Below are positions 614-58,554 of a stretch of DNA of 64,000 nucleotides, piece by piece. The position numbers and the translations under genes are program-made. Each line of letters begins with the position of its first letter. Positions within the stretch are counted from its first letter, which is position 1. The stretch lies in the IMG/VR virus record IMGVR_UViG_3300042317_001568, positions 62,001 through 126,000 of that record. One strand, given 5' to 3'. Under the pieces are notes generated by a model, which did not search any database, had not been told where the DNA came from, and saw nothing but the letters and a program-made list of their open reading frames with translations.

Positions 614-627
614 TTACGGAGGTTTTA

Positions 628-1059: not shown

Positions 1060-1093
1060 TCCTTAAAAACTACTTAGACATGGAGGTCTAACA

Positions 1094-1687
1094 ATGGCTG
1101 TTCCTGAGCAAATGTTTGCGCACGGTTTAGACGTCAAAAAGGGCTGGTTCGACATGGCCTCGCTCGATTATTCGGCGAAGCTTGCGACTACCGTCACGTT
1201 TGACGTAAAGCGCGGTCGCGTTGTCCACGTTAACACTAACGGTGAGTTCGTGCCGGGTGCGCACAAGACGTGCCCCGCGGTCTTCCTGCTTAACGGTTCG
1301 GACGACGCCGACGTAAGTAACCCCGGTTACAACTCGCCGATGACATCGGCGAATTTCATGCACATCGCAGTTGCGCCGACCGGCAAGATGTCCGGCCTCG
1401 TAGCGACTGGCGGTTACGAAATCTCCTCGACGGAGTTCGTGACTGCTAACACCTACACGCCCGGCGATCTGCTTTCGGTAACTACGAAAACTGGCGCTGG
1501 CAGCACCGTAGCTGCTACCGACGGTCTTCTGACGAACTACAGCGTTACGCAGTATGCGCAGCCGGTAGTCGGCGTTGTATCCAGCGGTGCTGGCAAGAAT
1601 CACAACGGGATTCAAGCCCTTTCGTTCTGGTGCGTCTATCTCCCGGGCGCGGCCAACTGGAACGGCGTACAGGCGGCTAGCGCCTAA
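1094..1687 (+). CDS. Putative capsid decoration/cement protein
   Basis: Beta-rich, Gly/Thr-rich 197 aa immediately upstream of the major capsid gene; strong SD. Confidence 0.6.
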   Translation: MAVPEQMFAHGLDVKKGWFDMASLDYSAKLATTVTFDVKRGRVVHVNTNGEFVPGAHKTCPAVFLLNGSDDADVSNPGYNSPMTSANFMHIAVAPTGKMSGLVATGGYEISSTEFVTANTYTPGDLLSVTTKTGAGSTVAATDGLLTNYSVTQYAQPVVGVVSSGAGKNHNGIQALSFWCVYLPGAANWNGVQAASA

Positions 1688-1718
1688 CTCTAACTAATAG
1701 AACATGGAGGTTCTTAAG

Positions 1719-2645
1719 ATGCCCACTCAGCAAGAAATCCAACTGCTCAACGAGACTCTTTTTGAGCAGCTTGATACACCCGGCATGCAGAAGCAGGCCA
1801 TTGATGCGGTTAACGACTTCACGCGCACCAAGATGCGTGAAGACGGCTTCTACCGTCGTATTATCCCGCCGCTAACCATCACCAACGACGAACTCGATCG
1901 TCAGGTTGATACGGACAAGCCGGTGAAGGTAGTCGACAAGGAGCCCGATTCCCCGGCAGCCGTGTCGATTCCGTTCGCCACGCTCCCGAGCAACTTTTAC
2001 ATCCGTGGCCCGCGCTACCGCGTCATGTTTGACCGGATCGTGTCGCCCCGCGCTGTAAAGGACGTTGACGAGCTGCGTACGTACGTCATCGACATCCGTC
2101 AGGTCCTCAGCGACAACATGATCAAGGACATGCTCGCTGAAGAAGACTCGAAGTTCATCACGGCGTTTAACCTCGCCGTAGGCACAAAGGACGCCGTTAA
2201 CACGCTGTCCGATACCGTGCAGTACGAATCGATCAGCGGCGGGATCACCCGCGAAACGCTGGTTGACGCGCTCAAGGTAATGCCGAAGACCCCGAGTCAC
2301 TTTGAGGTTGAAACCTGCCTCGTGAATAACATCACGATCAAGGAACTCCTCAAGTTTGGCCGCGACGAGATGGGTGGTGATTTCTCGCAAGACATCATCA
2401 AGAACGGTTGGGCGGAGACGAACTTCCTCAACTGCCGCTGGATCGTCACGATCAAGCGGAACCTCGTTCAGGACAACGAAATGTACATGTTCGCCAGCCC
2501 CAAGTTCATCGGAAAGAACTACGAGCTTGAGCCCACCACGATGTATATCCGTCGTGAAGCTTACATGCTTGAGTACTTCTCGTACAACACGCAGGGTGGC
2601 TCGTTCGGTCACACGAACGGTCTGGCGAAGGTTGAATTTGTCTGA
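1719..2645 (+). CDS. Major capsid protein (HK97-fold, inferred)
   Basis: ~308 aa; GGAGG SD places the start at ATG 1719; strongly biased C-ending codons; position between decoration and neck genes. Confidence 0.75.
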   Translation: MPTQQEIQLLNETLFEQLDTPGMQKQAIDAVNDFTRTKMREDGFYRRIIPPLTITNDELDRQVDTDKPVKVVDKEPDSPAAVSIPFATLPSNFYIRGPRYRVMFDRIVSPRAVKDVDELRTYVIDIRQVLSDNMIKDMLAEEDSKFITAFNLAVGTKDAVNTLSDTVQYESISGGITRETLVDALKVMPKTPSHFEVETCLVNNITIKELLKFGRDEMGGDFSQDIIKNGWAETNFLNCRWIVTIKRNLVQDNEMYMFASPKFIGKNYELEPTTMYIRREAYMLEYFSYNTQGGSFGHTNGLAKVEFV

Positions 2646-2673
2646 GTCGTGTAAATAACCAAGGAGCACAATC

Positions 2674-3069
2674 ATGAGTCAGGTTAAAGAGGCTGCCGAA
2701 CAGGCGTACGCCACCGTCGTTAGTCAGTTAGCAGCCCCCTATTTCTTTGAGAAGCTTTCGGCTCACGGCATCGCGCCGCGGACCGAGGGAGAGGCCGCCG
2801 AAATGTGGGCGGCGGCGCATAAGCTTCACGTGCTCTACACGGCTGAGCAGGAAAAAACAGCCGCGGCGCAGGCCGGCGAACTACAAGCTGTCAATCAGCA
2901 GTTAGACGTCGCCCTCGCCGCGGCTGGTTTCGGTTCTGGTTCTAAGACCAATAGCAACGTTGATATTTTCAAGGAAGCAGCGGTCGTCGCTGCTGAACAG
3001 CCTGAAATCGCCGATGCTGTGTTAACGCTTCAAGCGGCAGCCGCTGCTGCGCTACAGAGCGCCGAGTAA
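2674..3069 (+). CDS. Hypothetical Ala-rich head protein
   Basis: 131-aa ORF with AAGGAG RBS. Confidence 0.6.
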   Translation: MSQVKEAAEQAYATVVSQLAAPYFFEKLSAHGIAPRTEGEAAEMWAAAHKLHVLYTAEQEKTAAAQAGELQAVNQQLDVALAAAGFGSGSKTNSNVDIFKEAAVVAAEQPEIADAVLTLQAAAAAALQSAE

Positions 3070-3080
3070 CGGAGTAAAAA

Positions 3081-3494
3081 ATGCCAAATACGACAACTGA
3101 TCTCTACACCATTGTTAAAAATACGTCCGGCGGGGAGCGCTTCTTTGGCTTCCTAGGCGTTCGTGGCACGCGTCTTGCAAACAACGCCACGTACACCGTA
3201 CCCGGCGACCTTGTGGCGCAGCTGGGTGGCCAGCGCAGCCAACGAAAGTTTCAAGCGTTTGAAGAAGCGCTGAACACCAACAAACTCGAAATCGTGAAGT
3301 CTCCTTCGGTTTACCTGCTCAGCGAAACTGGCGGCGTGACCAAGGAACTGGCCCTGAATTCGGGTGGCTCGCTCGGCACCACAACCCCGTCGTGGGACGG
3401 TGGCAGCGCCTTCGCTGCTACGGCTGGCGCAACCGGCCCGACCGGCGCTACCGGTGCTACAGGCCCTCGCGGCGCTACAGGCCCCGCTGCCTGA
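3081..3494 (+). CDS. Virion protein with short C-terminal collagen-like (G-X-T) tail
   Basis: C-terminus [20 protein letters not shown]. Confidence 0.6.
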   Translation: MPNTTTDLYTIVKNTSGGERFFGFLGVRGTRLANNATYTVPGDLVAQLGGQRSQRKFQAFEEALNTNKLEIVKSPSVYLLSETGGVTKELALNSGGSLGTTTPSWDGGSAFAATAGATGPTGATGATGPRGATGPAA

Positions 3495-3518
3495 TAGTCG
3501 TCTCTTATCTGGTTTACG

Positions 3519-3555
3519 CAAGGGCTGGCCGTTTAACGGTCAGCCCTTGTTGTTT
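3519..3555 (+). terminator. Intrinsic terminator ending the head operon
   Basis: caagggctggccgt-tta-acggtcagcccttg stem followed by ttgttt. Confidence 0.75.
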
Positions 3556-3581
3556 GTATACTTATAGCACGGAGCACACTT

Positions 3582-4568
3582 ATGGCTGTTATCGCTACGC
3601 CGGTCGCCCACCCCATTGTCCAGTGCTGCGATAACGCTGCGCAGCCTGTTTTGACGCCAGTCACTTGCGCGGGACAAAACGTGCTCAGCGCCGTTGTTTC
3701 AACTGTGAACGGCCAGCCGGTCACAGGACGCATGCAGTCAATCTCAATTACACAAGGCCAGTGCGCTACGATTGAGTGGCAGATGCGCGATCAGTCTGGC
3801 GTGCCGGTTAACTTATCTGCATGTTCCGCGACGCCGTTCGCCATCGTGTTACGGTTAAAAGAGCAACTGTCGTGGGGAAACGTCAATTCGCCGCTTGAGG
3901 TTGCCGGCACTATTGCCGCTGCCGCAACCGGAAAAGTAACCGCGCAGCTTACGGCTGGAATGGTAGCTACGCCGGGTATTTACTACGCCGAATTTGCGTT
4001 AATTAATGTGCCGGCGCAAGCGCAAAACCAGCCGTGCGTTGTGTTTTCGAACACCTTTCATTTAATCATTAACCGCAGCAATTTTAACGGCGGCGCGGAA
4101 ATGGGCGGGCCCCCAAGTATCGCTGAAGTTCGTTTACACCTGCGCGACTCCAATCCCGGCGAAAGTTTTCTGCTCGACCGACTGATGTTTGACGACGCCG
4201 AAATCGCCCTCGCTATTACGCGTCCGGTGCAGTATTGGAACGAGATTCCGCCGCCGTTGGACCGCATTTACAACACACAAAATTTCCCGTTCCGCTATCA
4301 CTGGTTAGAAGGCATCTGCGCTAATCTGTTTTTGATGGTGGCTGAGCAGTTTCGCCGTAACCAGTTTAATTACTCTGCCGGCGGTCTTTCCGTAGACGAT
4401 CAAAACAAAGAAGGCGCTTACGAGCGTGCCGGCCAAACACGGTGGCAGGCTTATCGGGAGTGGGTGCGGGCGACAAAAGCCAGCATTAACCTTGAAAGCT
4501 GCTACGGCGAAGTTACGTCAAACTATAAGTACAGCGCCTACACCGACGCGATCCGAATTCGCTATTAG
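3582..4568 (+). CDS. Putative neck/head-tail adaptor protein with N-terminal beta-sandwich domain
   Basis: Position after the capsid genes; helical C-terminal region (EVRLHLRD...FDDAEIALA) typical of adaptor proteins. Confidence 0.55.
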   Translation: MAVIATPVAHPIVQCCDNAAQPVLTPVTCAGQNVLSAVVSTVNGQPVTGRMQSISITQGQCATIEWQMRDQSGVPVNLSACSATPFAIVLRLKEQLSWGNVNSPLEVAGTIAAAATGKVTAQLTAGMVATPGIYYAEFALINVPAQAQNQPCVVFSNTFHLIINRSNFNGGAEMGGPPSIAEVRLHLRDSNPGESFLLDRLMFDDAEIALAITRPVQYWNEIPPPLDRIYNTQNFPFRYHWLEGICANLFLMVAEQFRRNQFNYSAGGLSVDDQNKEGAYERAGQTRWQAYREWVRATKASINLESCYGEVTSNYKYSAYTDAIRIRY

Positions 4569-4692
4569 CGCATTCTAGAATCTGGAAAATGCGTCGTAAG
4601 TGCTTTGTTCCCTAGCACTTTCGCAATTCGCGAATTTGGAATATGGCGCTTGTCCGCAGTTCGCGAACCGTGGACAGCTGCGCGGACACTGG

Positions 4693-4721
4693 CTAAATAT
4701 GTTGCAAATTTGTGGCATATT
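4693..4721 (+). promoter_or_regulatory. Promoter-like motif CTAAAT-N17-CATATT, copy 1
   Basis: Identical boxes and spacing recur at 5465-5493 and 49079-49107. Confidence 0.75.
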
Positions 4722-4766
4722 TAACGTGGTTCCGATTACCTATGCCCACTAAAAAAGGGAGTTTCT

Positions 4767-5399
4767 GTGCTGGCTGTAAATCCACCAACCCAGATGTTGC
4801 TGCAGTACTTGGAGCATTGTCGCGACAATAGCGACGGCGTGTTCACTGATCCCGCGCTGCATCCGTACTTTATGTCGCTCGCCGTCGCGAAAGCCGTCGG
4901 CATGGACCACACCACTGAAGAGTATAAAGAGCGTGCGTTGTCGACGCTCGCGAATTGGTCGCGGATGCTGTGCGGACAGCTGACCAGCGTATCTATGCGG
5001 GAAATCGCTGACTGCGGCAAGTTCGCGCAGGACAGCGGTGACCGCAAAGGCGAGAAAATGGCCAAAGACCTGCTCGACTCGATGCCGCTGATTCAGGCTG
5101 TTTTCAAGTCGTGGGACGCTGCGGTTGACCACGAGCACATCGCGGAGTGGATTTATGAAGACGGCGTACGTCGGGAGAAGGAAGGGACTGCGCCCCATAT
5201 TTCGAATGAGTTTGTTGCAAAAGAGAAGAAGAAGCTCGACGACCTCTTCGAATTAATTCAAAAGAAGCTCGGAGAGCTCGATGGCTCTGGCCCGCAGCCC
5301 GAGGAGGTCAAATCTCCCGAGCCGGCGCGTCCACCAGTGACGCCGGCCGACATCATGAAGATGCTGTTCGATAACGCCAAGAAGCCGTCTGCGAACTAA
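4767..5399 (+). CDS. Hypothetical protein (cassette A cargo)
   Basis: 210 aa, GTG start after an AAGGGAG RBS; has its own promoter motif and terminator. Confidence 0.7.
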   Translation: MLAVNPPTQMLLQYLEHCRDNSDGVFTDPALHPYFMSLAVAKAVGMDHTTEEYKERALSTLANWSRMLCGQLTSVSMREIADCGKFAQDSGDRKGEKMAKDLLDSMPLIQAVFKSWDAAVDHEHIAEWIYEDGVRREKEGTAPHISNEFVAKEKKKLDDLFELIQKKLGELDGSGPQPEEVKSPEPARPPVTPADIMKMLFDNAKKPSAN

Positions 5400-5412
5400 G
5401 TTCAACGCGGCG

Positions 5413-5457
5413 AGAAGGAGCGGGCACCAAAACCGGTGCTCGCTTTTTCTTAGCTAT
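5413..5457 (+). terminator. Intrinsic terminator followed by TTAGCTAT
   Basis: agaaggagcgggcacc-aaaacc-ggtgctcgctttttct. Confidence 0.75.
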
Positions 5458-5464
5458 CGGTGAC

Positions 5465-5493
5465 CTAAATTAGGCGCGATTTTGCGTCATATT
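5465..5493 (+). promoter_or_regulatory. Promoter-like motif CTAAAT-N17-CATATT, copy 2
   Basis: Repeated motif upstream of the AAA+ gene. Confidence 0.75.
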
Positions 5494-5529
5494 ATTTGTG
5501 TCCCCGTTTCCGCTATGAAGGAGCTTGCG

Positions 5530-6369
5530 ATGAGTATTGCAGACGGAGTGTGCGATCTTCTGCCCGGCTATTTCGCTCGACGAGGCGAGGCCCTGCTGGC
5601 CAGATGGATGCACGAGGCCCGCGGGAAGGAACCGCGCGGTGGTTTACTGGTCGGCCCGCCCGGCACCGGCAAGACGTTCTTTGCCGACGCGTTCGCCCGC
5701 GGCCGCAAGGCCGAGCAGGTGTTTATTCCGTGCCACCCGTGGCTCACGAATGAGGAGCTACATCAGGGTGTGGACATCGGCCGCGTGGCGGTCGGGGTCG
5801 AGCACGCCGACGAGGCGTACATCGACGGCCAGCTGCTGCGCGCTGTGCGCATGTCGCACGACTGCGACGTGGTTATCACGTTGGACGAGGTCGAAAAGGC
5901 TGGGTCGCGGTTTTACCCGCTTATCCTCGACTTCTTGCAGAATGGTCGGGTGCCTGATGCCCGCCACAAGCTGCACAGCGGCAACACGGCCCGGATGTTT
6001 ATCGTCCTGACCGCGAACGAAGAGGTTGACCTGCCCGAGGCCATTAAACGGCGCTGCTTTCGGGTAAACATGGGCTTTCTGCCCGAGCATGTCGAAACCG
6101 ATGTGCTGCGCAAGCAGACAGGCGCACCGGGAGGGGCCTGTCGCATCATTGTGCGCATGGCGAACGCAATCCGGCAGAACGGCGACTCCAAGCCGTCCCT
6201 GCAGGAGCTTCGTCACTTGCTTATGGCGCGAGACCTGTGCGTAAGCACGGACGACGTAGCCACTTTGATCGAAGCGTTTCTTGTAAAAGAAACCAAGGAC
6301 ACGGAGGCCCTTAAACAGGCATTCAGCAAACCCGAAGCTGTACTGTTCGGGGAGTTCAAAAGGAAGTAA
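5530..6369 (+). CDS. AAA+ ATPase, MoxR/AAA_5-like
   Basis: Walker A GPPGTGKT, Walker B ITLDEVEK, sensor I LTAN, Arg finger EAIKRRC; AAGGAG RBS favours ATG 5530. Confidence 0.85.
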   Translation: MSIADGVCDLLPGYFARRGEALLARWMHEARGKEPRGGLLVGPPGTGKTFFADAFARGRKAEQVFIPCHPWLTNEELHQGVDIGRVAVGVEHADEAYIDGQLLRAVRMSHDCDVVITLDEVEKAGSRFYPLILDFLQNGRVPDARHKLHSGNTARMFIVLTANEEVDLPEAIKRRCFRVNMGFLPEHVETDVLRKQTGAPGGACRIIVRMANAIRQNGDSKPSLQELRHLLMARDLCVSTDDVATLIEAFLVKETKDTEALKQAFSKPEAVLFGEFKRK

Positions 6370-6371
6370 CC

Positions 6372-7781
6372 ATGAGCCTGACACTGCGGAAGTTGCAGCG
6401 AATGCTGTCGAAGTCCGTGAAAACTACCCGCGATGTTAGGTTTACGGACCCGCGAGAGCGGGCAGAGTTCGCGGAGTTTATCAAGGGCGTATACGCCGAA
6501 GAATTTACGAGCCCGCTTCTTCGACAAGGGCACGTTCGCGAGAACTGCCCGTGCGGTAATTGCGGCCCCAAAACCGTGAACAACATCACGGCGCTTATTG
6601 ACCGGTTGACAAAGCGGCACGGCCATCGTGCCACACTCAGCCAGTTGCTGGAGCCCAGAAATAAGTCTGGGCGGGCTCAAGGCGGTAGCGGTAAATCAAA
6701 CGGAGCACCGCAGGAGGAGCCCCAGCAGGCACCTTCTGGCGGGTTTGATCCTCCGCCCGCCAAAGATACGGCCGCGGAACCACCGCAGCCCGAGAACTGG
6801 GAACCAACTCCCGCCGCCCAAGAAACTCCAAAACCAAAAACTGAGCGTGAAAGGCTTTCCGACGAGGAAAAAGATTTACGTGCGCGGTTAAAGGAATTGG
6901 AGAAGCAGAAAGCCGCCGCGAAAGCACGCGGCAGTCTGCAAGCTTCGGCGATAGATGTTGTGATAAAGAAAGCCAGAAAGCAGCTGAAGGACGCCCGGAA
7001 ACAGGCATCTAAAATCAGCGGCGTTGCTGGTATTGAGAGTGCTCCGTCGTTGGAGGCTCGACGACGCGCAGCCGGCACACATGGCCGCCTGCGGGTCGTT
7101 CCGCCTCAACTGCGGAACAAAACAGCGGAACTCATTAATAAGTTAGTGCATGAAAGCGGCGCAGCTGGTGACCGCCTCACGCCTATCCCAATTTTGAGTG
7201 CGCGAAAAGTTGTCAAGAGGATGCTTGTCCGGCGTCCACTTGGTAACGCGTTTAAGGAGGACAGCAACGCCGGTCGTCCCGTCACGCTGTTCTTGCCCGA
7301 CGTCTCGCCGTCTTGCGCCCGACAGGCTCAAGCGGCGTGTGACGTCGCTAATGCGGCAGGGTACGCTGGAGTCTCTGGCTCTGACGTACTGGTTTTCCCA
7401 CACTCTAACGGAGAGGTGGAGGAAGATTACGTGCCGTGGTTTAACGGTCGACCCAACTTGGCAAACTTGACGAAAACAGAAGCGCTGTTTTCCGAGATAA
7501 CAAGCGGTCGGTCGCGGTATAACATCCGGATAGTAGTCGCCATTGGCGACCACGACGCCGCGGAGTTGTATCGAGAAATCGCGGCGCTAAAAAAAGTGGT
7601 GCGATTAGTGTGGTTGCACAATATTCCAGTGAGTCGTCGTCGACCCACGGTTGTGCCGTCTGACGCCAATAACTTGTACGGCGAGAATTGGACAGCTGAA
7701 ACACGCAACAAGGTCACAATGATCTACGGTTGCGTTGATCAGGCGTCTATTCTCGGCGGGCTAGAACTGGCTCTTTCTTAA
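6372..7781 (+). CDS. vWA-domain partner of the MoxR-type ATPase
   Basis: MIDAS-like DVSPS and VVAIGD; Pro/Glu/Gly-rich linker; begins 2 nt after the ATPase stop. Confidence 0.65.
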   Translation: MSLTLRKLQRMLSKSVKTTRDVRFTDPRERAEFAEFIKGVYAEEFTSPLLRQGHVRENCPCGNCGPKTVNNITALIDRLTKRHGHRATLSQLLEPRNKSGRAQGGSGKSNGAPQEEPQQAPSGGFDPPPAKDTAAEPPQPENWEPTPAAQETPKPKTERERLSDEEKDLRARLKELEKQKAAAKARGSLQASAIDVVIKKARKQLKDARKQASKISGVAGIESAPSLEARRRAAGTHGRLRVVPPQLRNKTAELINKLVHESGAAGDRLTPIPILSARKVVKRMLVRRPLGNAFKEDSNAGRPVTLFLPDVSPSCARQAQAACDVANAAGYAGVSGSDVLVFPHSNGEVEEDYVPWFNGRPNLANLTKTEALFSEITSGRSRYNIRIVVAIGDHDAAELYREIAALKKVVRLVWLHNIPVSRRRPTVVPSDANNLYGENWTAETRNKVTMIYGCVDQASILGGLELALS

Positions 7782-7836
7782 GCGCGCACCATTAACAGCG
7801 GCACTCCGTTTTACGCCGCAGGAGGTAATTTATGCA

Positions 7837-8411
7837 CTGGCCTAGATAAAGCGATGCCCGGGGTAATCAGCCCGGAGCCTTCGTCTGCAGGGATTAATTG
7901 TTTTCCATGTAGCCGAAATAAAGGGACGACAAACAAACACGGGTTCTTGAAGGCTCGTGAGGACAAAAGTCGTAAACATAGCGGAGCTGTGTCCGACGCT
8001 TTGAGGGGACAATGGCAGGTTAGTCCCACAGGGGAGACACGAGACTTTATTGCGGAACGTCGCCTAATAGCGAAACGCCGCGACATCGTTTCGGTCAAAC
8101 CAGACCGGCCCCGGATTTTGTAACGCGGTTTGCTGCCTAGAAGCGGCCGCGCATATCCCCTGTCGAAAGCGCGCTCGATGGGGGGTCGCTCAATCTGGGA
8201 CTTTTCGTCTGTGCGAAGGTCACGCGGGCCGTCGTGCCCGCGGAATATCACAGAACTATACTAACACGCGCTATTCGTCTAGTCCGGGTAGCGTAGGCTT
8301 TCTCGGTGCGCCTGCTTTAAGCGGTTGCCGCCACGTTCGGCGAGCACTGAGCCACTTCCGCTGAGCAATTGGCGGAGGGGGGAATCGAAATGGCCCCTTT
8401 GGGGCCGTTTC
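7837..8411 (+). ncRNA. Large structured non-coding RNA candidate, family unassigned
   Basis: Long-range closing helix 7837-7853/8269-8287 and at least 10 nested helices; wobble pairs read as G-U on the + strand; no credible CDS. Confidence 0.7.
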
Positions 8412-8420
8412 TTTAGCTAT
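8387..8420 (+). terminator. Intrinsic terminator followed by TTAGCTAT
   Basis: gaaatggcccc-ttt-ggggccgtttc-ttt. Confidence 0.75.
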
Positions 8421-8443
8421 CAGCGCTCCAGTAGAATAATGGT

Positions 8444-9673
8444 ATGACGTACCAAAAAACTTTTCCGTTCCGCCGTGTTTCCGTGGATCACATGGTCCGC
8501 GGAACAACCCGGGTTTGGTGGCAACTTGAGCCGCTATTCCGCGATCCCGGGCCGCATGTCTACCAGCTGCAAGTCAGCAAATCTGGTTTAACAAACTCTT
8601 CAGACTGGGCCGATGTCGGGCCGCCGTTAACAAACGCTTATGTGGCGTATGACTCGGCGTGGCGACTATCCGGATATTCCCTGCTTACGCATTATCGCGT
8701 TAAATTAACAACGCCAACAACTGTCTATGTCTCGCAATCTGCAGGTTGCTTTGGCGAGTTAAACGAGCGCGACTGGGTGTTGTCGCAAGAAATTATCCGT
8801 AAAGAACAGCTACGGCATCAATTTGTGTCGACGCCCGGGTATCTTATTAAGGCTATGCGTTTCGGAAAGCCGTGCCCGCGCTGCCGAGAAAAGCTGACGC
8901 AGGAAGTACTCGACTCGTATTGCCCGGTCTGTAGCGGCACTGGTTTTGAGGTCGGCTATTTTCCGCCGCAGCCGTTGCAATGCTGGGATTTATCTTTACA
9001 GACAATTCAAGAAGAAGGCGATGCGCAGGCCCGCGGGCCCACACGCGACAACGCCGTTGTCCAAGCACGCGTAATTGGTTTTCCGGCTTTAAATAAATAT
9101 GACGTGTGGGTAAACGCCGCCAGCGACGAACGCTGGATAATTGACACAATTCAAGTTGTCGCGGCTATGAGGAATGTGCCGCTGGTGTATCAGGTGCAGT
9201 TAAACCTCGCGCCGTTTACAGACGGTATTTACACATTTGAAGTCGGCGGAGAGTCGCCCACGCGCGACCCGTCGACAGAAGGCCCTACTGTTGGGTGCGG
9301 CGATGTCATCTTAAACCATAACTACAACGGCAACGATCGGTACGCCTACCTGTCTCCGACGGGGTGCCCAATCAGCGGCGCTACGGTATACGTGTTTAAC
9401 AGAAACGTATATGACGTAAACGGCCCGCAAATTGCCCGGACTATGGCGCTCGCAAAAACGAGCACAACCGCAAACGGCCGCTGGGTGCAGGGCGTTAATG
9501 TAAATCCCGGCAACTACGCTATTCTTTATGAAAAGACTGGCGAGTTCGGCCCAGACGTAGATTTTGTAACTGTGGTTGCGCCACCGCCTACCGCATCTGT
9601 TAAAACAGCGACACCCGCAAAGAGCGCCCCGACATGGCCGACGAAAAAAGAAAACGACTTCTGGACCATATAA
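8444..9673 (+). CDS. Putative head-closure/neck protein with CxxC...CxxC insert and C-terminal beta-sandwich
   Basis: CPRC...CPVCSGTGF; lies between the adaptor and tail-completion genes. Confidence 0.55.
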   Translation: MTYQKTFPFRRVSVDHMVRGTTRVWWQLEPLFRDPGPHVYQLQVSKSGLTNSSDWADVGPPLTNAYVAYDSAWRLSGYSLLTHYRVKLTTPTTVYVSQSAGCFGELNERDWVLSQEIIRKEQLRHQFVSTPGYLIKAMRFGKPCPRCREKLTQEVLDSYCPVCSGTGFEVGYFPPQPLQCWDLSLQTIQEEGDAQARGPTRDNAVVQARVIGFPALNKYDVWVNAASDERWIIDTIQVVAAMRNVPLVYQVQLNLAPFTDGIYTFEVGGESPTRDPSTEGPTVGCGDVILNHNYNGNDRYAYLSPTGCPISGATVYVFNRNVYDVNGPQIARTMALAKTSTTANGRWVQGVNVNPGNYAILYEKTGEFGPDVDFVTVVAPPPTASVKTATPAKSAPTWPTKKENDFWTI

Positions 9674-9767
9674 AGCTAAGTCCGGGGAAAAAGCGGCTGC
9701 AGCCCGGCAGAATAAAAATAGCCCTGCCGAAAATCTCAATAAACAAATCGCGCCCAAAGGATACGCC

Positions 9768-10487
9768 ATGAGCGACTGCCCAACGCCGCCGAACCCGCCA
9801 GAGGTCGAGGCGCAGTTTCCGGAAGGTAGCCAGCCGGAAAACCGCGTAGACAAAGTTAGTGCGCTGTGCTCTTACGGCATGCGCCCCCACGTCATGACCG
9901 GCCTTTTACGTCAATTACTCATCGGGCACTTTACCGATCCGCAACATATTGAAGAGCCAAGAGTTAGGCGACAAATAGAGCTGCTTAACCAATGGCAGCC
10001 AGAACCAGACATTGGAGTGCCGCCGCAAAAGGGCATTCTTATTGAGAGCATTACTCGCTGGACACCCAATTCGGCCGACAAGCGACCGGCGGTACTAATT
10101 AAACGAAACTCGTGGACATGGTTGAAACAGACCATTGGTGACCGGTTGGAAACTAATCTTTACACCGGCAAAGAATCTTATTTTGGTTTTTGGCAAGGAA
10201 GTCATACAATTTACTGTATGTCCGGAACAGGCGCCGAGACTGAGTTCTTGGCCGCCGAAGTTTGCAAATTTTTGATACTTTTCTCGCCGTTAATACGGTC
10301 GCAACTGGAATTGCATAAATTCTTTGTCAGCGAAGTTGGCGGTGTTGGGGAAGTGCAAGAAGTGGTTCAGGGATACGCCGTCCCTGTCACTGTGACGTAT
10401 GTAGCAGAGGAGAATTGGTCGATTCAACCATACGTCCCGCGCCTCAAGCGGATTGTCTTCAAGGCTTCAGATTTGTTGTCGTATTAA
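9768..10487 (+). CDS. Putative tail completion/terminator protein
   Basis: Directly upstream of the sheath gene; RPAVLIKR motif; ATG 9768 follows AAAGGA. Confidence 0.5.
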   Translation: MSDCPTPPNPPEVEAQFPEGSQPENRVDKVSALCSYGMRPHVMTGLLRQLLIGHFTDPQHIEEPRVRRQIELLNQWQPEPDIGVPPQKGILIESITRWTPNSADKRPAVLIKRNSWTWLKQTIGDRLETNLYTGKESYFGFWQGSHTIYCMSGTGAETEFLAAEVCKFLILFSPLIRSQLELHKFFVSEVGGVGEVQEVVQGYAVPVTVTYVAEENWSIQPYVPRLKRIVFKASDLLSY

Positions 10488-10582
10488 AACGCGGTAGTTG
10501 TTTTGTTTAGAATAGTGGTTGTGTATACTACTGAGTACGCGATTACCGCACCGCACACAATTTAGGGCATGGAGGCCTTCGT

Positions 10583-13500
10583 ATGTCGAGCTACGTAAAA
10601 CCGCAAGTTCTTGTATTCCAAGAATTCTCAATCGTCCCCACCGAAATCACTGAGCCGCTGCGCGCGCACATCACCGGCCCGAACGGCGTGCTGCACCGGT
10701 ATAGCGACTCTGATGAAAAACAAACCATCCGCCTCGGCGCATATAACCAAACTGACGACGTTTGCTACCCGTGGCCGCAGCGTAAGCCCGGCTCGCTTGT
10801 CGACCTTGATTACGTCAAGCTGTACATCGACAACGCGCTGCTCAAGTATTACGAGCACAACCTGAGCGACGTCGAAACCACAATCACCGCTGTAGAAACA
10901 AACCAGCGAGTGCTTCCGAACTGGATCACGTCGGACGACCTCTCCTTTAAGTCGAACACCGCGGCGTACCCGCGATCGACAGAGTTTAATGACCGCGACG
11001 TTCAACTTGGTGACGTTGTTTATCTGCGCACGGTAAGCGCCGATAACAACTGCGAAGAGACCACACTGTGGACATCTGTCGCGGGCTTTGCTTCGGACAA
11101 CGTCCCGTCGCGCATTAAGCCGGCTGTGGTCGACGACAACAACTGCGCGGGCCATAGCGCTACAACTAGCTCAGCGCAAGTTCACGCTGACGGCGGGGCG
11201 CTCGACAACTCGGTTGTAATCAACGCCGTCGATGGTTCGCTCTACAACGGCCTGCCCAGCGGCGACGTAGAAGAGACTTATACCATTACAGTCGTAAAGA
11301 GCTCGATTAGCGGATGCAACGCTGCGCGACTTCGCGTTCGATCGGCTTCTCGCCGCGACGACGTCGCCGAAGTAACAGCGGCGGCTTTCGGCTCGCCGAC
11401 AACTATCGGTACGCGCGGCCTCAAAGTCACGTTTGCCGTGACTGCCGGCAGCGGCGACACTTTCCTCGTCGGCCAGCAGTGGACTGTAAGCGTAACTCAA
11501 AGCGTCACCGCCACGACTATCGCGTCGGCCGCCGACGGTAACTTCACTATGGACGGCGATGACATCCTCGGCGCCTATACCGGCGACAAGAACGACATTT
11601 ACGTCGTCGAAGTCACCAAGGGCGGTTACTGGGCTGCTCTCCCGGCGATCACTGTTCGCACGGTAAAAGGTCTTGATTTCTCCGGCCCAACCGAAGTAAC
11701 TGCCTCTGGTGTAGAGGTCGGTATCGGCACCAGCGGCGTAAAAATTGTGTTGACGTCGACACAGGGTCTCCGTAAGGGTGACAAGTTCTACGTCACTGTT
11801 GTTTCGGCCAAGGCCGGCGAAGTGCGCAAGCTCATTCTCCGTGACGACCTCCCGGTTGCTATGCGAGAAAAGTCGATGCTCGCCAAAAAGCTCCACACGG
11901 CCAAGCTCGCTTCGACAGCCAACGTCGTCAGCCTGAGCGGCACGCCAACTATTGACGGCGTCGCGCTCCAGTCGGGCGACAAGGTTCTCTTAAAGAATCA
12001 AACCAACGCTGCGCAGAACGGTCTGTATGTCGTTCCGGCCGCGTCGGGCGACCCGGCTACCGTGGGCAATTGGACACGGACCACTGGCAATGACGTACTC
12101 ATCGCCGGCTCGTTTGTCCGCGTTACGCACGGCTCGACACAGGCTACCAAGGGTTACCTGTTAACTAACACCGGGACGTTGAATTTAGGTACCACGACGT
12201 TGACGTTTGTAAACGACGACGACGCTGATGTGCTGAAGTTCCCGTCGCTCGACCTGAAGCTGTTCATCAAGGACAACATTCAGGTTTCGAAGAATCGTAT
12301 CGGTTACGCCCCGATGACCAACTACTGGTTTGAAGATACGCAGATTTGCGTACAAGAAGGCATTGTGGCGTATCACCCAGAGTGGACAGATGCCGGCGCA
12401 GAGCAGCCGCTGCCCGTTGAGGGCGGCACGCTGTACGCCGAATACCGCGAGTGGGTGTTCGACCTGAGCGACGAAGTTAACGCCATGAGCGACGTGGCCG
12501 ATCTTGATAACATTCCCGGCCAGCTTCACCCGGACAACCCGCTGAAGTGGGGCGTTTACAAGGCGCTTGCTAATTCGAACGGTACCGCTGTGAAGTACAC
12601 AGCCGTGCACGATCCGAAAGAGCTGGACAGCTGGGTGCAGGTCCTTGAGCGTCTCAAGGGTCGCGACGACTTCTATAACCTTGTCCCGATGACGTTTGAC
12701 CGTATGGTGCAGAACCTGTGGGCCGCCCACATCGGCGCCGAGTCGAACGAGTACGCTAACAACTGGAAAGCTGGTTACTTTGCGCTCCGCGCCGAGACTC
12801 ATCAGCTGGTTGTCGGCGAAGGCGCCCGAATTCGGGGCGTTCTTGCCGAGGTTATGCCCGAAGCCGTTCTGGCCACGCTTGCCGATGACCCGAACGCGAC
12901 GAACACGCAGTACACGCTGCTGCAAGTTCCGACCGGCAACAACAACGCCAGCGGTTACTTTATTACAAATGACGTACGCCCCGGCGACATCGTTCGGTAC
13001 AACTACACCACCGACGGTTTCGGCGACGTGCAGTACGAAGAGTACGTTGTAGACAAGGTTCTGTCGGAAAACTCGCTGCTCCTGTACACCGGCGGTGACG
13101 TCGCTGTAACAACGCCGCAGCAGTTTGAAATCTGGCACAACCGGAACCGCAACGAAGTTGCCGACCACATTGCCGAACAGGCTGGTTCGCTGTCGAACCG
13201 TCGGGTTTGCGCCGTGTGGCCGGATCAGGTCGGCGAGGCCGGCACAACACAGCCCGGCTATTACTTAGCCGCTGCGCTGGCCGGTCTGACGTCGGGCGTG
13301 GTCCCGCACCAGCCGCTTACCAACGTAGAGGTAGCCGGTTTCGACGACTTCACGCGGTCCTACAAGTACTTCAATGAAACGCAACTTAACCGTATGGCTG
13401 AAGCTGGCGTCTGGATTGTGACGGAAGACCGTGACGGCACGCCGCACACGCGGCACGCGCTGACGACGGACAACCTCGACCTGAATCGTCGGGAAGAGAT

Positions 13501-13792
13501 GATCCGCCGCAACGTCGACTCGATGTCGTACCTGTTCTACCGTCGTCTGCGTCCGTACATCGGCCGCACGAACGCGCAGCCCGGAATGGTTAAGGTGCTA
13601 GAGTTCGAAGTAACGCGCGTCATCGATTTCTTGAAGTCTAACGGCAACACTGCAGAACTCGGCTCGCAGTTAATCAACGGCTCGATCCGCAAGCTGCAGA
13701 TTCATCCGCTGCTGAAGGATCGGATCGAGATTGTTCTTGATCTGGTTGTTCCGGCTCCGCTCAACAACATCGAACTGCACTTAGTGGTCTAA
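10583..13792 (+). CDS. Tail sheath protein (1069 aa, with inserted domains)
   Basis: N-terminal YVKPQVLVFQE; sheath-like C-terminus (PHQPLTN...RRNVD...P.PLNNIEL); followed by a tube-sized gene. Confidence 0.85.
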   Translation: MSSYVKPQVLVFQEFSIVPTEITEPLRAHITGPNGVLHRYSDSDEKQTIRLGAYNQTDDVCYPWPQRKPGSLVDLDYVKLYIDNALLKYYEHNLSDVETTITAVETNQRVLPNWITSDDLSFKSNTAAYPRSTEFNDRDVQLGDVVYLRTVSADNNCEETTLWTSVAGFASDNVPSRIKPAVVDDNNCAGHSATTSSAQVHADGGALDNSVVINAVDGSLYNGLPSGDVEETYTITVVKSSISGCNAARLRVRSASRRDDVAEVTAAAFGSPTTIGTRGLKVTFAVTAGSGDTFLVGQQWTVSVTQSVTATTIASAADGNFTMDGDDILGAYTGDKNDIYVVEVTKGGYWAALPAITVRTVKGLDFSGPTEVTASGVEVGIGTSGVKIVLTSTQGLRKGDKFYVTVVSAKAGEVRKLILRDDLPVAMREKSMLAKKLHTAKLASTANVVSLSGTPTIDGVALQSGDKVLLKNQTNAAQNGLYVVPAASGDPATVGNWTRTTGNDVLIAGSFVRVTHGSTQATKGYLLTNTGTLNLGTTTLTFVNDDDADVLKFPSLDLKLFIKDNIQVSKNRIGYAPMTNYWFEDTQICVQEGIVAYHPEWTDAGAEQPLPVEGGTLYAEYREWVFDLSDEVNAMSDVADLDNIPGQLHPDNPLKWGVYKALANSNGTAVKYTAVHDPKELDSWVQVLERLKGRDDFYNLVPMTFDRMVQNLWAAHIGAESNEYANNWKAGYFALRAETHQLVVGEGARIRGVLAEVMPEAVLATLADDPNATNTQYTLLQVPTGNNNASGYFITNDVRPGDIVRYNYTTDGFGDVQYEEYVVDKVLSENSLLLYTGGDVAVTTPQQFEIWHNRNRNEVADHIAEQAGSLSNRRVCAVWPDQVGEAGTTQPGYYLAAALAGLTSGVVPHQPLTNVEVAGFDDFTRSYKYFNETQLNRMAEAGVWIVTEDRDGTPHTRHALTTDNLDLNRREEMIRRNVDSMSYLFYRRLRPYIGRTNAQPGMVKVLEFEVTRVIDFLKSNGNTAELGSQLINGSIRKLQIHPLLKDRIEIVLDLVVPAPLNNIELHLVV

Positions 13793-40235: not shown

Positions 40236-41252
40236 ATGTCGCGTCCCGGCTTTTACAACGACAACGAGTACCGCGCCTATCCGTTTATTTACAACTCGGC
40301 TGCGGACGCGTTGCCGACTAACGTTATTGTTGACGCCGGTTTCATTATGGGGTTGGACGCAGATTACGATGAGACGACAGATTACATTTGGTTAGAGCGC
40401 GTGCAGCGTATATGCGTTACCGGGCGCACAGACTTCAAATTTGTGTTTCGGGTCACGGGCGTTTCGCAACCGATTATTTTTGCGCGGGCCGCGCCAAATG
40501 TTGGCACGCCGCCAACTATTGAGTGGGTGACCGAGTACGCCGAATCAGCCGACGACGCCGCGAGCTGCGGAACAGACCCTGTCTGGTCTGGGTTTATGGT
40601 CACCGGCCGCCTAACCGAATTGGCGGCGAGCATGGTGGAACAGTTCGGGGCGCCAAACACAGACAGTGGCGCGGTAACACACGAGTTAGTGTTTGCGAAT
40701 AACGCGTACAGGATTGAACCGGCACGCGTGCAGAATTTACGCAAAGCCTATCTTCGCAGTGTCAGCGTAGGCAATTATCGCCGCGTAACTGTGCCGGTGT
40801 GCAACAACAGCGGCGCAAGCGTTTTGCCGAATAAAACAGTTATCGTAAACAAAGAATGCATGCACGGCAATTTGCTGTTTCGCGAAGGATACAACTGCCA
40901 GATTATTCAAAAGACGCGCAACAACAGTATTAACATCGGCGCAGTAAAGGGCGGCGGCACAGCAGAAGACAGCGCCCTGTGCGAGAACTCGGGCGAAATC
41001 CCCTTTACGCCGAACGAGGAAAAACCGCTAGAGGTCGCGGCGGCAAACGGCAAACCCGAAGTGCGCAGCAAATTTTTGAGCGGCGGGCCTGCGTGCAAAG
41101 ACTTGATATTCACGATTAACGGAATCGGGGGCGGTAATGTAAACTTAATAGGCGGCGTTAACTTCAGCATGCGCGGGCCAGACGAAGGCGAAACAGCCAC
41201 GCTCCACTTGAACATGAATCAGAATATTCAAGGTGGCTGCGATGGTAATTGA
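40236..41252 (+). CDS. Tail protein, paralog family
   Basis: FYNDN.YRAYPF; [10 protein letters not shown]. Confidence 0.55.
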
Positions 41253-47200: not shown

Positions 47201-47211
47201 CGCTAGCGTGA
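41233..47211 (+). CDS. Giant fibre protein: ~16 Cys-rich repeats, nine LPRA repeats, two collagen-like G-P-T/S tracts
   Basis: Repeats are directly visible in the translation. Confidence 0.8.
42658..44075 (+). repeat. Coding tandem repeat with a 195-nt (65-aa) period
   Basis: CEWEFDI codons start at 42658, 42853, 43048, 43243, 43438, 43633, 43828 and 44023. Confidence 0.9.
46420..47117 (+). repeat. Collagen-like Gly-X-Y coding repeat (~75 triplets)
   Basis: Uninterrupted or near-uninterrupted [12 protein letters not shown] run. Confidence 0.9.
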
Positions 47212-49601: not shown

Positions 49602-49702
49602 AACATGCACGGCTATGCAGTCGTAACAATCTACGCAGATTGTTTCGACTCGTAGTCGTGCTAAATTTTGCTATTGCCACTTTCCCTTAGCTATTACAAC
49701 TT

Positions 49703-50188
49703 ATGGCCAAAAAAATTGACAAAACGTTGCAGGTACAACCGACCCCGAAAACCGCGTATTCGATGCCGGAACCAAATGATGACATGGCCGCCTTCGGTTG
49801 GGACTTGTCAAAAATTCGGTTTCCGGCGCCCGGCTTAAAACGCGGCGACGTCTGGTCCGGCCCGCCGATCTGGAGCGTGCCAATTAACATCGAGCTCGTA
49901 AATAAGTACGGCCCCGATATTCAGTTCCTCAACCCCCGATTTCTGCAACTCATCCTCGACGCATCGCCCGAAGTGCAAGAAGCAGTAGCTAAAGCAAAAG
50001 CGGCGCGATATACAGCCACGGCTATCGCGGAACTGCAGAAAACTATTATGACTGTCTTCAAAACGATGATTATCCCAAACATCGTCGAGCGCTTTGAAAA
50101 CATATCGGACGGCGTAGCGCAATTCTACGCCGCCCGATTAGCGTGGACGACAAAGTACGGAGAAGACCAATCAGAAGACGTCAAGTAA
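49703..50188 (+). CDS. Hypothetical protein
   Basis: 161-aa ORF. Confidence 0.55.
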   Translation: MAKKIDKTLQVQPTPKTAYSMPEPNDDMAAFGWDLSKIRFPAPGLKRGDVWSGPPIWSVPINIELVNKYGPDIQFLNPRFLQLILDASPEVQEAVAKAKAARYTATAIAELQKTIMTVFKTMIIPNIVERFENISDGVAQFYAARLAWTTKYGEDQSEDVK

Positions 50189-51595: not shown

Positions 51596-51603
51596 GCTCA
51601 TTT

Positions 51604-51822
51604 ATGTTGGTGCTGGCGCGCAAAAAGAATGAAGAAATCATCATCGGAAGCGGCCCCGACGCCATCGTGTTAAAGGTGATGGAGCTAACGCAAGATCGCG
51701 TGCGGCTCGGCATCACGGCGCCGGCTACCGTCAACATACTGCGAAAAGAACTCATTAAACTTGGAGAAAAAGAAAATGGGCTGGAACGATCGGATGATCG
51801 ACAATCCATACCCGCCGTATGA
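51604..51822 (+). CDS. csrA: Carbon storage regulator CsrA (RNA-binding translational regulator)
   Basis: MLVLARKKNEEIIIG...VRLGITAP..V.ILRKE matches the CsrA signature. Confidence 0.9.
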   Translation: MLVLARKKNEEIIIGSGPDAIVLKVMELTQDRVRLGITAPATVNILRKELIKLGEKENGLERSDDRQSIPAV

Positions 51823-58071: not shown

Positions 58072-58113
58072 TTTGCGTTAATTTTGTATACTGTCGTTGC
58101 AAGGAGGCGCGAC

Positions 58114-58554
58114 ATGATATTCAAAATTTGCTGCAAAGACATCAACAACCTGACCACGACAGAAGTCACGACGATTATGTCGCGACTGTCTTGGCCAGAC
58201 TCCGGTAGCGATAGCTCCATTCAAAAAGAGCTCATTAAACGCTACGTAACTGTCACGCCGGGATTAAAACCGGCTATGACGCTAGCGCTGATTTGGATCA
58301 ACGACGAACTGGTTGGGTGGGTCGGAACACGACCATGGCCTGAGAAGTTCAAAGGCAATCCAATTATGGCGCAAACAGTCGAGTGCTTTGTGGACGAAAA
58401 TCATCGCCGCAAAGGTATTGGGCGTATTGGCCTGCAGGCCTTGATAGCTGCGGGTTTTGTGAACAGGTTGCGCCCTGTTTCGGTGTATGCGCCAGAGGTC
58501 ATAAAACTGGCGGAGCAATGTGGCTGCGCCATAGTCATCTACTGCGACTCATAA
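58114..58554 (+). CDS. GNAT-family acetyltransferase
   Basis: FVDENHRRKGIG acetyl-CoA-binding motif A; AAGGAGG RBS. Confidence 0.75.
   Translation: MIFKICCKDINNLTTTEVTTIMSRLSWPDSGSDSSIQKELIKRYVTVTPGLKPAMTLALIWINDELVGWVGTRPWPEKFKGNPIMAQTVECFVDENHRRKGIGRIGLQALIAAGFVNRLRPVSVYAPEVIKLAEQCGCAIVIYCDS

What the first reader, a model, noticed from the sequence alone, without database searches (positions are those of the whole stretch)
1074..10579. CsrA-type hexaloop hairpins over the SD of the major virion genes
Seen: ttagac-ATGGAG-gtctaa (1074-1091, decoration protein), agaac-ATGGAG-gttct (1699-1714, major capsid) and agggc-ATGGAG-gcctt (10564-10579, sheath). The loop is identical and C-G closed, while the three stems differ yet still pair, which is natural covariation. 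Known: CsrA/RsmE bind (A/U)CANGGANG(U/A) presented as an ANGGAN hexaloop that overlaps the SD. The phage encodes CsrA at 51604-51822. Inference: a phage CsrA regulon that times or balances translation of high-copy structural proteins.
Basis: partly seen in the sequence, partly recalled or inferred. Interest (0 to 1): 0.85.

Follow-up and report, generated by a model that had tools for sequence, protein, structure and literature searches.

The report
GGA-loop hairpins on phage virion-gene ribosome sites
A family of uncultivated ~200-kb phages folds the ribosome-binding sites of its capsid, capsid-surface and tail-sheath genes into small conserved hairpins that look exactly like binding sites for the RNA regulator CsrA, which these phages usually also encode; whether CsrA actually controls them is untested.

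Summary
All three hairpins sit at the stated coordinates, 5-9 nt before the start codons of a probable capsid decoration protein, the major capsid protein and a sheath-like protein. The gene at 51604-51822 is a real CsrA (Pfam E 1.2e-17).

In about 60 related viral contigs the same hexaloop (A-Y-G-G-A-G, closed by C-G) recurs at the same genes. The stems change by compensatory substitutions, and neighbouring genes with equally good Shine-Dalgarno (SD) sequences have no stem. The hairpins are therefore real, selected RNA elements.

csrA is also conserved: it lies in the same syntenic slot in 40 of 45 relatives, it is closest to the FliW-partnered type, and its RNA-binding residues are kept. The loop matches the published CsrA consensus sequences exactly.

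The regulatory link is still inferred. One lineage has csrA precisely missing from that slot yet keeps all three hairpins. A csrA-positive subclade has lost the sheath stem. No second GGA site accompanies the hairpins, and the stems are weak (-3.6 to -7 kcal/mol).

My best reading is that these are CsrA operator sites tuning translation of high-copy virion proteins (about 0.45). The main rival is a CsrA-independent hairpin that simply displays the SD (about 0.38).

The parts
1074..1091 (+). RBS hairpin 1: 6-bp stem ttagac/gtctaa, hexaloop ATGGAG, SD GGAGG(T). ACAUGGAGGU is a full match to A/UCANGGANGU/A.
   Evidence: MFE -5.4 kcal/mol; conserved in 48/61 orthologous sites with a stem of 4 or more pairs; covariation
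1094..1687 (+). 197-aa protein directly upstream of the capsid gene; probable capsid decoration or surface protein
   Evidence: no Pfam/PHROG hit; all-beta model, pLDDT 65; best fold matches are capsid-surface proteins, none significant
1699..1714 (+). RBS hairpin 2: 5-bp stem agaac/gttct, hexaloop ATGGAG. ACAUGGAGGU is a full consensus match.
   Evidence: -3.6 kcal/mol; 48/61 orthologous sites with a stem of 4 or more pairs; 86.7% of cells paired and 4/5 pairs with double changes; found by a covariance model (CM) built without it (E 0.0024)
1719..2645 (+). major capsid protein, 308 aa (the true start is 1719, not the in-loop ATG at 1704)
10564..10579 (+). RBS hairpin 3: 5-bp stem agggc/gcctt, hexaloop ATGGAG. 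GCAUGGAGGC matches the core consensus only.
   Evidence: -7.1 kcal/mol in context; stem 3-8 bp in most close relatives, absent in one subclade
10583..13792 (+). tail sheath-like protein, 1069 aa, with an Ig-like insertion
10522..10529 (+). TGTATACT promoter-like box about 35 nt upstream of hairpin 3, conserved in relatives; it places the hairpin in a short 5' UTR
58092..58114 (+). fourth SD hexaloop hairpin: gucguuGC-AAGGAG-GCgcgac, bulged 8-bp stem, before a GNAT acetyltransferase gene (58114-58554)
   Evidence: (-9.9 kcal/mol, z -1.75); conservation in relatives not examined
51604..51822 (+). phage csrA, 72 aa, closest to the FliW-partnered type; its 3' end overlaps the next gene (ATG 51776)
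   Evidence: Pfam E 1.2e-17; nearest structures are B. subtilis CsrA 1T3O and Geobacillus CsrA-FliW 5DMB; L2, R6, K7, I14, A39, R47, E49 conserved; syntenic in 40/45 relatives
616..623 (+). related SD without a stem (ACGGAGGT before gene 628-1059); CACGGAGG in most relatives
   Evidence: stem of 4 or more pairs in only 4/53

Best explanation
Shown: each hairpin is a short, weakly stable RNA stem-loop in the late mRNAs. It holds the first four SD bases (GGAG) in a fixed six-base loop A-N-G-G-A-G, closed by a C-G pair, 5-9 nt before the start codon of a high-copy virion gene. Selection maintains this loop geometry while the stem letters change.

Inferred: these are operator sites for CsrA. The phage makes its own FliW-type CsrA from a conserved module about 50 kb downstream, and the host probably has one too. 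A CsrA dimer clamps the GGA loop, covers the SD and blocks 30S binding, so translation of capsid, decoration and sheath proteins is held down or balanced. As late mRNAs accumulate they outnumber CsrA and escape together. That would give a delayed, coordinated burst of the proteins needed in hundreds of copies.

The direction and size of the effect, and which CsrA (phage or host) matters, are not known.
For: - Consensus match. The loop plus closing pairs (ACAUGGAGGU) match the RsmE consensus A/UCANGGANGU/A. CAUGGAG is an exact instance of the SELEX consensus mAwGGAs of the FliW-type C. jejuni CsrA (PMC6692469).
- Fixed geometry. 74 of 117 unique orthologous sites have their best hairpin in exactly the NNGGAG hexaloop register, 15 in any other register and 28 in none. 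Register-shifted controls give 1.5% against 12.7%. A simple 'expose the SD' hairpin would not need to pair the fifth and sixth SD bases every time.
- Covariation. MCP site: 86.7% of cells paired, score 0.428 against 0.126 in shuffles (0/500), 4/5 pairs with compensatory changes. Decoration plus sheath sites: 0.542 against 0.220 (0/500), 5/5 pairs. RNAalifold predicts the same hairpin.
- Gene specificity. Decoration 48/61 and MCP 48/61 sites with a stem of 4 or more pairs. Neighbouring genes with good SDs: 2/48, 1/51, 4/53 and 0/35.
- The regulator. csrA is real, keeps its RNA-binding residues, and occupies the same slot in 40/45 related loci. On 20 contigs it co-resides with the hairpins.
- Long co-existence. 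A phage that makes CsrA and carries perfect CsrA sites on its most abundant mRNAs has kept both through divergence down to about 70% nucleotide identity.
Against: - One lineage (100% identical across four contigs, L008-L010 and L260, from four samples) lacks csrA precisely at the conserved slot yet keeps all three hairpins; its sheath stem is 8 bp.
- Two more loci lack csrA there (L273, L263).
- A csrA-positive subclade (L034, L043; relatives L030, L031 and L033 share the loss) has no sheath stem.
- GGA triplets are not enriched 10-70 nt upstream (0.76 per 62 nt against 0.83 background). The usual two-site leader architecture is therefore absent.
- GGAGGU is also simply a strong SD. Given a stem, ACA...GU follows automatically, so sequence alone cannot separate CsrA binding from SD display.
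- Non-hairpin SDs in the same phages also read A-Y-GGAG.
- There is no GGA site in the csrA leader itself, no Csr-type sponge RNA and no FliW among the neighbours tested.
- The csrA status of the distant relatives that also carry such hairpins is unknown, except for one csrA-positive contig.
Confidence: 0.45

Rival explanations
1. CsrA-independent, cis-acting RBS hairpin. A small local stem keeps the SD's GGAG single-stranded in a loop. That insulates it from pairing with neighbouring coding sequence in long polycistronic late mRNAs, so initiation stays maximal and constant for the proteins needed in the highest copy number. The resemblance to a CsrA site is a by-product, because CsrA sites mimic SDs.
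For: - The hairpins persist unchanged in the csrA-less lineage.
- They mark the strongest SDs (GGAGG[T]) of a genome in which many genes have weak or no SD.
- They sit on high-copy genes: capsid, decoration, sheath, and in distant relatives the tube and a probable scaffold gene.
- The stems are weak (-3.6 to -7 kcal/mol), so a ribosome could open them easily.
- There is no second GGA site.
Against: - The loop is always exactly six bases, and the fifth and sixth SD bases are always paired. That hides part of the SD instead of exposing it.
- Hairpins also occur before a GNAT gene and a 789-aa GTG-start protein that are not obviously high-copy.
- The cultured distant relative Arash has a plain AAGGAG with no stem at its capsid gene.
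- This reading does not explain why the clade conserves csrA.
Confidence: 0.38
2. mRNA processing or stability element. The hairpin marks an endonuclease cut site, or protects a processed 5' end, so that the segments encoding capsid, decoration and sheath proteins outlive the rest of the operon.
For: The elements are intergenic within a polycistronic head operon (1060-1093, 1688-1718). Relatives often carry an extra, larger hairpin just upstream of the decoration-gene site.
Against: The stems are too weak for a protective 5' hairpin. The distance to the start codon is fixed and the SD is always in the loop, which points to initiation rather than decay. No nuclease gene was identified in the window.
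Confidence: 0.07
3. Target of another factor that recognises GGAG. One candidate is a RegB-like endoribonuclease, which in T4 cuts GGAG in SDs. Another is a phage-specific translational activator.
For: GGAG is invariant in the loop. Only 64 kb of a 205-kb genome was examined, so such a factor could be encoded elsewhere.
Against: No such gene was found. T4 RegB acts on early mRNAs, not late ones (from my own knowledge, not checked against a paper). The match to the CsrA consensus is more specific.
Confidence: 0.05

Closest known systems
CsrA-FliW-flagellin circuit of Bacillus subtilis and Campylobacter jejuni
   Same: The phage protein is closest to this CsrA type (1T3O, 5DMB). In those bacteria the main target is the mRNA of the most abundant self-assembling structural protein. 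CsrA binds A(A/U)GGA in hairpin loops that overlap the SD. The C. jejuni SELEX consensus mAwGGAs equals CAUGGAG (PMC6692469).
   Different: The putative targets here are phage capsid, decoration and sheath mRNAs. There is one GGA hairpin per leader rather than two. No FliW homologue was found in the neighbours tested. Nothing is known about an antagonist.
RsmE/RsmA-hcnA type SD hairpin operators of Pseudomonas (consensus A/UCANGGANGU/A)
   Same: An ANGGAN hexaloop closed by C-G, with an A-U pair next, overlapping the SD. Hairpins 1 and 2 match every specified position.
   Different: The gammaproteobacterial systems rely on sponge sRNAs (RsmY/Z, CsrB). None is detectable here, and the protein is not of that subfamily.
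csrA genes on phages and plasmids (about 1.2% of phage genomes, PMC7366521; plasmid RsmQ, PMC9928087; phage PTXU04 csrA, PMC11879866)
   Same: A mobile element carries its own CsrA. Knockdown of the PTXU04 gene reduces plaque size.
   Different: Those proteins are proposed to act on host mRNAs, and no phage-encoded target has been described. Here candidate targets lie on the phage's own structural genes.
T4-type RBS hairpins (genes 25, 38, e)
   Same: A local hairpin at the RBS of a late phage gene modulates initiation.
   Different: As I recall them, the T4 hairpins bring a distant SD closer to the start codon or sequester the RBS. They do not present GGA in a conserved hexaloop. This comparison is from memory and was not tested.

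Membership tests
CsrA/RsmA RNA binding site | GGA triplet in the loop of a short hairpin | tested here: met
CsrA/RsmA RNA binding site | extended consensus A/UCANGGANGU/A (RsmE) or mAwGGAs (C. jejuni CsrA) | tested here: met
   Hairpins 1 and 2 match fully. Hairpin 3 matches the core CANGGANG only. The ACGGAG variants in relatives fit RsmE but not 'w' of mAwGGAs.
CsrA/RsmA RNA binding site | the site overlaps the SD or start region of the regulated gene | tested here: met
   The loop holds GGAG of the SD, and the start codon lies 5-9 nt after GGAG.
CsrA/RsmA RNA binding site | two or more GGA sites about 10-63 nt apart, bridged by one dimer (typical of repressed leaders) | tested here: not met
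   GGA within 10-70 nt upstream: 0.76 per 62 nt against 0.83 background. 56% of sites have at least one, and 56% is expected.
CsrA/RsmA RNA binding site | physical binding by CsrA and a translational effect | not testable with these tools
   Needs EMSA, toeprinting or reporter assays.
CsrA/RsmA RNA binding site | co-occurrence with a cognate csrA | tested here: inconclusive
   20 contigs carry both. 2 contigs of one genotype have the hairpins but no csrA at the conserved slot. A csrA-positive subclade lacks the sheath stem. The host's csrA status is unknown.
CsrA protein family (PF02599) | profile match above the curated cut-off | tested here: met
   64 bits against a 27-bit cut-off, E 1.2e-17
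CsrA protein family (PF02599) | conserved RNA-binding residues (L2, R6, K7, I14, A36, I42, R44, E46 in C. jejuni and E. coli numbering) | tested here: met
   L2, R6, K7, I14, A39, I45, R47 and E49 are present. L2, R6, the R44 equivalent and the E46 equivalent are invariant in the 12-sequence alignment A1, and the LVL-R N-terminus and the R-x-E motif are kept in the clade's CsrAs. Residue list from PMC6692469.
FliW-CsrA partner-switch system | a FliW (PF02623) partner encoded alongside | tested here: not met
   No Pfam hit in the five neighbours 49703-52066, nor in other small ORFs tested. The remaining 140 kb of the genome was not examined.

The most novel reading that the evidence does not exclude
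The phage has co-opted the flagellar CsrA logic for virion assembly. Its CsrA represses capsid, decoration and sheath mRNAs through the SD hexaloops. A protein partner (an unassembled subunit, a chaperone, or the conserved overlapping downstream gene product MGWNDR...) relieves the repression. Synthesis of each polymerising subunit would then be coupled to assembly, as flagellin synthesis is coupled to secretion by FliW-CsrA.
Probability: 0.1. Interest if true: 0.88.

Novelty: new variant of a known kind. Interest (0 to 1): 0.62.

Why it matters
csrA genes are common in phages. This CsrA type alone hits at least 305 stretches in IMG/VR, many on 200-570-kb contigs. Even so, their role in the phage life cycle was described as untested in 2025 (PMC11879866), and the usual assumption is that they manipulate the host.

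These hairpins are the first concrete candidate targets I could find on a phage's own genes, and they sit on the genes whose stoichiometry matters most. The hypothesis can be tested directly with short synthetic RNAs, a 72-aa recombinant protein and reporter fusions, without culturing the phage.

If CsrA turns out to be irrelevant, the element is still a clean, covariation-supported example of a conserved RBS structure that marks high-copy virion genes. That would be useful for annotation and for RBS design.

Tried and rejected
- Megablast of 10 kb against cultured phages: no match. Only 27%-identity capsid hits by protein search.
- Single-protein searches with CsrA and with the 880-aa neighbour found only identical contigs. 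Alignment-based searches were needed.
- A third CsrA search aimed at the distant relatives returned none of their contigs among its best 80 of 305. Their csrA status therefore stays unknown, except L352/L118, which is csrA-positive.
- Whole-window enrichment of ANGGAN hexaloop hairpins: none (15 against 12.9 in shuffles).
- Folding-energy z-scores of the three hairpins: about 0, so thermodynamics alone gives no support.
- Second GGA sites: not enriched.
- Csr/Rsm sponge RNAs or any other Rfam family: only one tRNA.
- FliW or any annotated partner near csrA: none.
- SD hairpins in the 8-kb neighbourhoods of csrA in unrelated phages: 3.6% against 2.5% in the control, not informative because those loci are not structural modules.
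- Mini-ORFs starting at the in-loop ATG: rejected, because many relatives have ACG there.
- Host inference from MAG bins is mixed: Gemmataceae, Phycisphaerae, Nanopelagicales, Nannocystaceae, Methylococcales. Together with the Planctomycetes-like CsrA this is only a weak hint of a planctomycete host.


Full report
**What is in the window**

- 1074-1091: ttagac-ATGGAG-gtctaa
- 1699-1714: agaac-ATGGAG-gttct
- 10564-10579: agggc-ATGGAG-gcctt

Each ends 2-4 nt before a start codon (1094, 1719, 10583). The loop therefore holds GGAG of a GGAGG(T) Shine-Dalgarno (SD) sequence, and the fifth G forms the closing pair with the C.

The mechanical ORF start of the capsid gene (1704) is the ATG inside the loop. 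Relatives that read ACGGAG there show that the true start is 1719.

CATGGAGG occurs four times against 0.79 expected. The fourth copy lies inside a gene and has no stem.

Of 22 + strand GGAG-plus-start sites in the window, only these three have an uninterrupted stem of five or more pairs around the hexaloop. A fourth SD hexaloop hairpin with a bulged stem (58092-58114, loop AAGGAG) precedes a GNAT acetyltransferase gene.

ANGGAN hexaloop hairpins are not enriched in the window as a whole (15 against 12.9 in shuffles). The hairpins are also weak (-5.4, -3.6 and -7.1 kcal/mol, z-scores near 0). The window alone therefore shows a positional coincidence, not proof.

**The genes**

- 51604-51822 is a CsrA (Pfam PF02599, 64 bits, E 1.2e-17).
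- 1719-2645 is the major capsid protein (27% identity to the annotated capsid protein of Salmonella phage Arash, E 1e-21; PHROG major head protein).
- 10583-13792 is a long sheath-like protein with an Ig-like insert.
- The 197-aa protein at 1094-1687 has no family hit. A model built from 24 orthologues (pLDDT 65) is all-beta. Its best fold matches are capsid-surface proteins: the outer shell of Borrelia phage BB1, the HFTV1 and Sf11 capsids, the phi29 head-fibre base, and minor capsid proteins of mycobacteriophages. None is significant. 'Decoration protein' is plausible but not established.

**Relatives**

The window is part of a 205-kb IMG/VR contig. The capsid protein retrieved 66 loci from about 60 viral contigs, most of them 150-230 kb, at 53-100% capsid identity. 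A profile search added about 20 more distant contigs.

In these the motif C-A-(C/T)-G-G-A-G-G recurs before the same three genes, with stems that differ. Stems of four or more pairs around the hexaloop, by gene:

| Gene | Sites with stem of 4+ pairs |
|---|---|
| Decoration gene | 48/61 |
| Capsid gene | 48/61 |
| Sheath gene | 10/24 cleanly aligned starts |
| Neighbour w2674 (good SD) | 2/48 |
| Neighbour w3081 | 1/51 |
| Neighbour w628 | 4/53 |
| Neighbour w3582 | 0/35 |

Further observations:
- At least nine further sheath starts with a stem of five or more pairs fell in the 'internal alignment' class.
- The same phage has one more such hairpin just outside the window (L001:688-703, gccgc-ATGGAG-gtggc), before a 789-aa GTG-start protein of unknown function.
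- More distant relatives carry ANGGAG hexaloop hairpins on further structural genes, including the tube and the 400-460-aa protein upstream of the head genes.
- Among all distinct SD sites, 12.7% in the close clade and 9.2% in the distant clade have a stem of four or more pairs. Register-shifted controls give 1.5% and 2.4%.

**Covariation**

On gap-free alignments anchored on GGAG:
- The capsid-gene site has 86.7% of cells paired, a covariation score of 0.428 against 0.126 in shuffles (0/500), and compensatory changes at four of five pairs. Slid controls score 0.05-0.22.
- The decoration and sheath sites together give 81.6% paired, 0.542 against 0.220 (0/500), with all five pairs changing on both sides.
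- RNAalifold predicts the same hairpin without being told.
- A covariance model built from the decoration and sheath sites alone finds the capsid-gene site (E 0.0024).
- The loop register is fixed. 74 of 117 unique sites have their best hairpin as the NNGGAG hexaloop, 15 in any other register and 28 in none.

The hairpin is a real, selected RNA structure.

**CsrA in the clade**

The phage CsrA has only a handful of close homologues in the large protein collection. Its nearest named relatives are planctomycete CsrAs. The nearest solved structures are B. subtilis CsrA and the Geobacillus CsrA-FliW complex, so it is closest to the FliW-partnered type.

The residues needed for RNA binding in C. 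jejuni and E. coli CsrA (L2, R6, K7, I14, A36, I42, R44, E46; PMC6692469) are present, and the N-terminal LVL-R and the R-x-E motif are kept across the clade's CsrAs.

Profile searches showed csrA in a conserved block: w50449, w50918, csrA, an overlapping small gene starting MGWNDR, a reverse-strand 394-aa gene, and an 880-aa gene. Using the well-conserved upstream neighbour as a probe, 40 of 45 loci have csrA directly after it. On 20 contigs csrA and the hairpins are on the same molecule.

**Evidence against a strict phage-CsrA regulon**

- In L258/L259/L260 the neighbour's stop codon is followed after about 20 nt by the MGWNDR gene. csrA is cleanly absent.
- Two of these loci (L258, L259) lie on the contigs of L008 and L009. 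With L010 and L260 that makes four contigs of one genotype, 100% identical across four samples, whose nearest csrA-positive relative is only about 72% identical.
- This genotype has all three hairpins, and its sheath stem is 8 bp.
- L273 is a second, independent clean absence, and L263 has another gene in the slot.
- Conversely, the csrA-positive contigs L034 and L043 (and L030, L031 and L033 of the same subclade) have lost the sheath stem while keeping GCATGGAGAG.
- GGA is not enriched 10-70 nt upstream of the hairpins. The two-site leader typical of CsrA repression is therefore missing.
- No sponge RNA, no FliW among the tested neighbours and no GGA site in the csrA leader were found.
- GGAGGU is also simply the best possible SD. 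Once a stem is required, the A-C on the 5' side follows from the G-U on the 3' side. Only the first loop A and the fixed hexaloop geometry go beyond 'SD plus stem'.

**Evidence for the CsrA reading**

- The match to the published consensus sequences is exact. ACAUGGAGGU fits A/UCANGGANGU/A, and CAUGGAG fits mAwGGAs of the FliW-type C. jejuni protein.
- The hexaloop register, which always pairs the fifth and sixth SD bases, is what CsrA recognises. It is not what maximal SD exposure would favour.
- The clade has kept csrA and the hairpins side by side over long divergence.
- In FliW-type systems the principal CsrA target is the mRNA of the most abundant self-assembling structural protein, flagellin. 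That is a close functional analogue of capsid and sheath subunits.

**Verdict on mechanism**

I put about 0.45 on CsrA (phage, host or both) binding these loops and tuning translation. Titration by accumulating late mRNAs is the likely way out of repression. I put about 0.38 on a CsrA-independent hairpin that displays or insulates the SD. The remainder goes to processing or stability elements, or another GGAG-binding factor.

MAG bins holding relatives are mixed, two of six being Planctomycetota.

**Comparison with the literature**

csrA alleles on phages are known (30 of 2517 genomes in 2020, PMC7366521). [quoted passage not shown] My searches of the held library found no report of CsrA sites on phage structural genes. 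This is therefore a new variant of a known kind of system. It is well supported as an RNA element and unproven as a regulon.

Noticed in passing
window 3555-3562, 10522-10529, 58085-58092: Exact TGTATACT boxes. All are on the + strand, intergenic, and 20-55 nt before a gene start. The box is conserved before the sheath gene in relatives. Likely a phage promoter class (-10-like TATACT preceded by TTGT).
   Followed up: partly
window 5449-5457, 8412-8420, 49686-49694: (C/T)TTAGCTAT boxes in intergenic regions before genes 5530, 8444 and 49703. The last heads the module that contains csrA. Possibly a second promoter class, which would put csrA in a different temporal class from the sheath gene.
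   Followed up: no
window 10547-10559 and the orthologous positions in L004-L027: Conserved CCGCACACA box between the TGTATACT box and the sheath hairpin. It contains no GGA and its function is unknown.
   Followed up: no
window 51776-51822; L076, L078-L081: The csrA 3' end overlaps the start of the next gene (MGWNDR...) by 47 nt. The conserved 'NGLER' tail of CsrA is that start read in another frame. In one subclade the csrA ORF continues to 96 aa after a Lys-rich A-run.
   Followed up: partly
L258, L259, L260, L273, L263: Natural variants lacking csrA at the conserved slot. There are two independent clean absences, and one replacement by a membrane-protein-like ORF.
   Followed up: yes
window 6289-6318: Covariance-model hit (E 0.049) ACACGGAGGCC, inside the end of gene 5530-6369 and 55 nt upstream of the SD AAAGGAAG of gene 6372. 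This is the only place with CsrA-like two-site spacing.
   Followed up: partly
L001:688-703 (about 7.6 kb upstream of the window start): A further hairpin, gccgc-ATGGAG-gtggc, before a 789-aa GTG-start protein with no family hit. Conserved in L005, L006, L011, L014 and L020.
   Followed up: partly
window 57999-58071: tRNA-Thr (anticodon TGT), followed immediately by a TGTATACT box and the fourth SD hairpin.
   Followed up: no
window 41242-47211; 56429-56899; 10583-13792: A 1989-aa protein with collagen triple-helix repeats (a likely fibre). A pyrimidine-dimer DNA glycosylase. A sheath-like protein that is unusually long (1069 aa) with an Ig-like insert at residues 430-545.
   Followed up: no
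window 3518-3550: A strong 15-bp terminator-like hairpin overlapping the -35 region of the promoter-like site before gene 3582.
   Followed up: no
L071-L150, L362-L441: CsrA proteins beginning MLVLSRKK are very common in IMG/VR (at least 305 stretches). Many are on contigs of 200-570 kb that are not among the capsid relatives retrieved here.
   Followed up: partly
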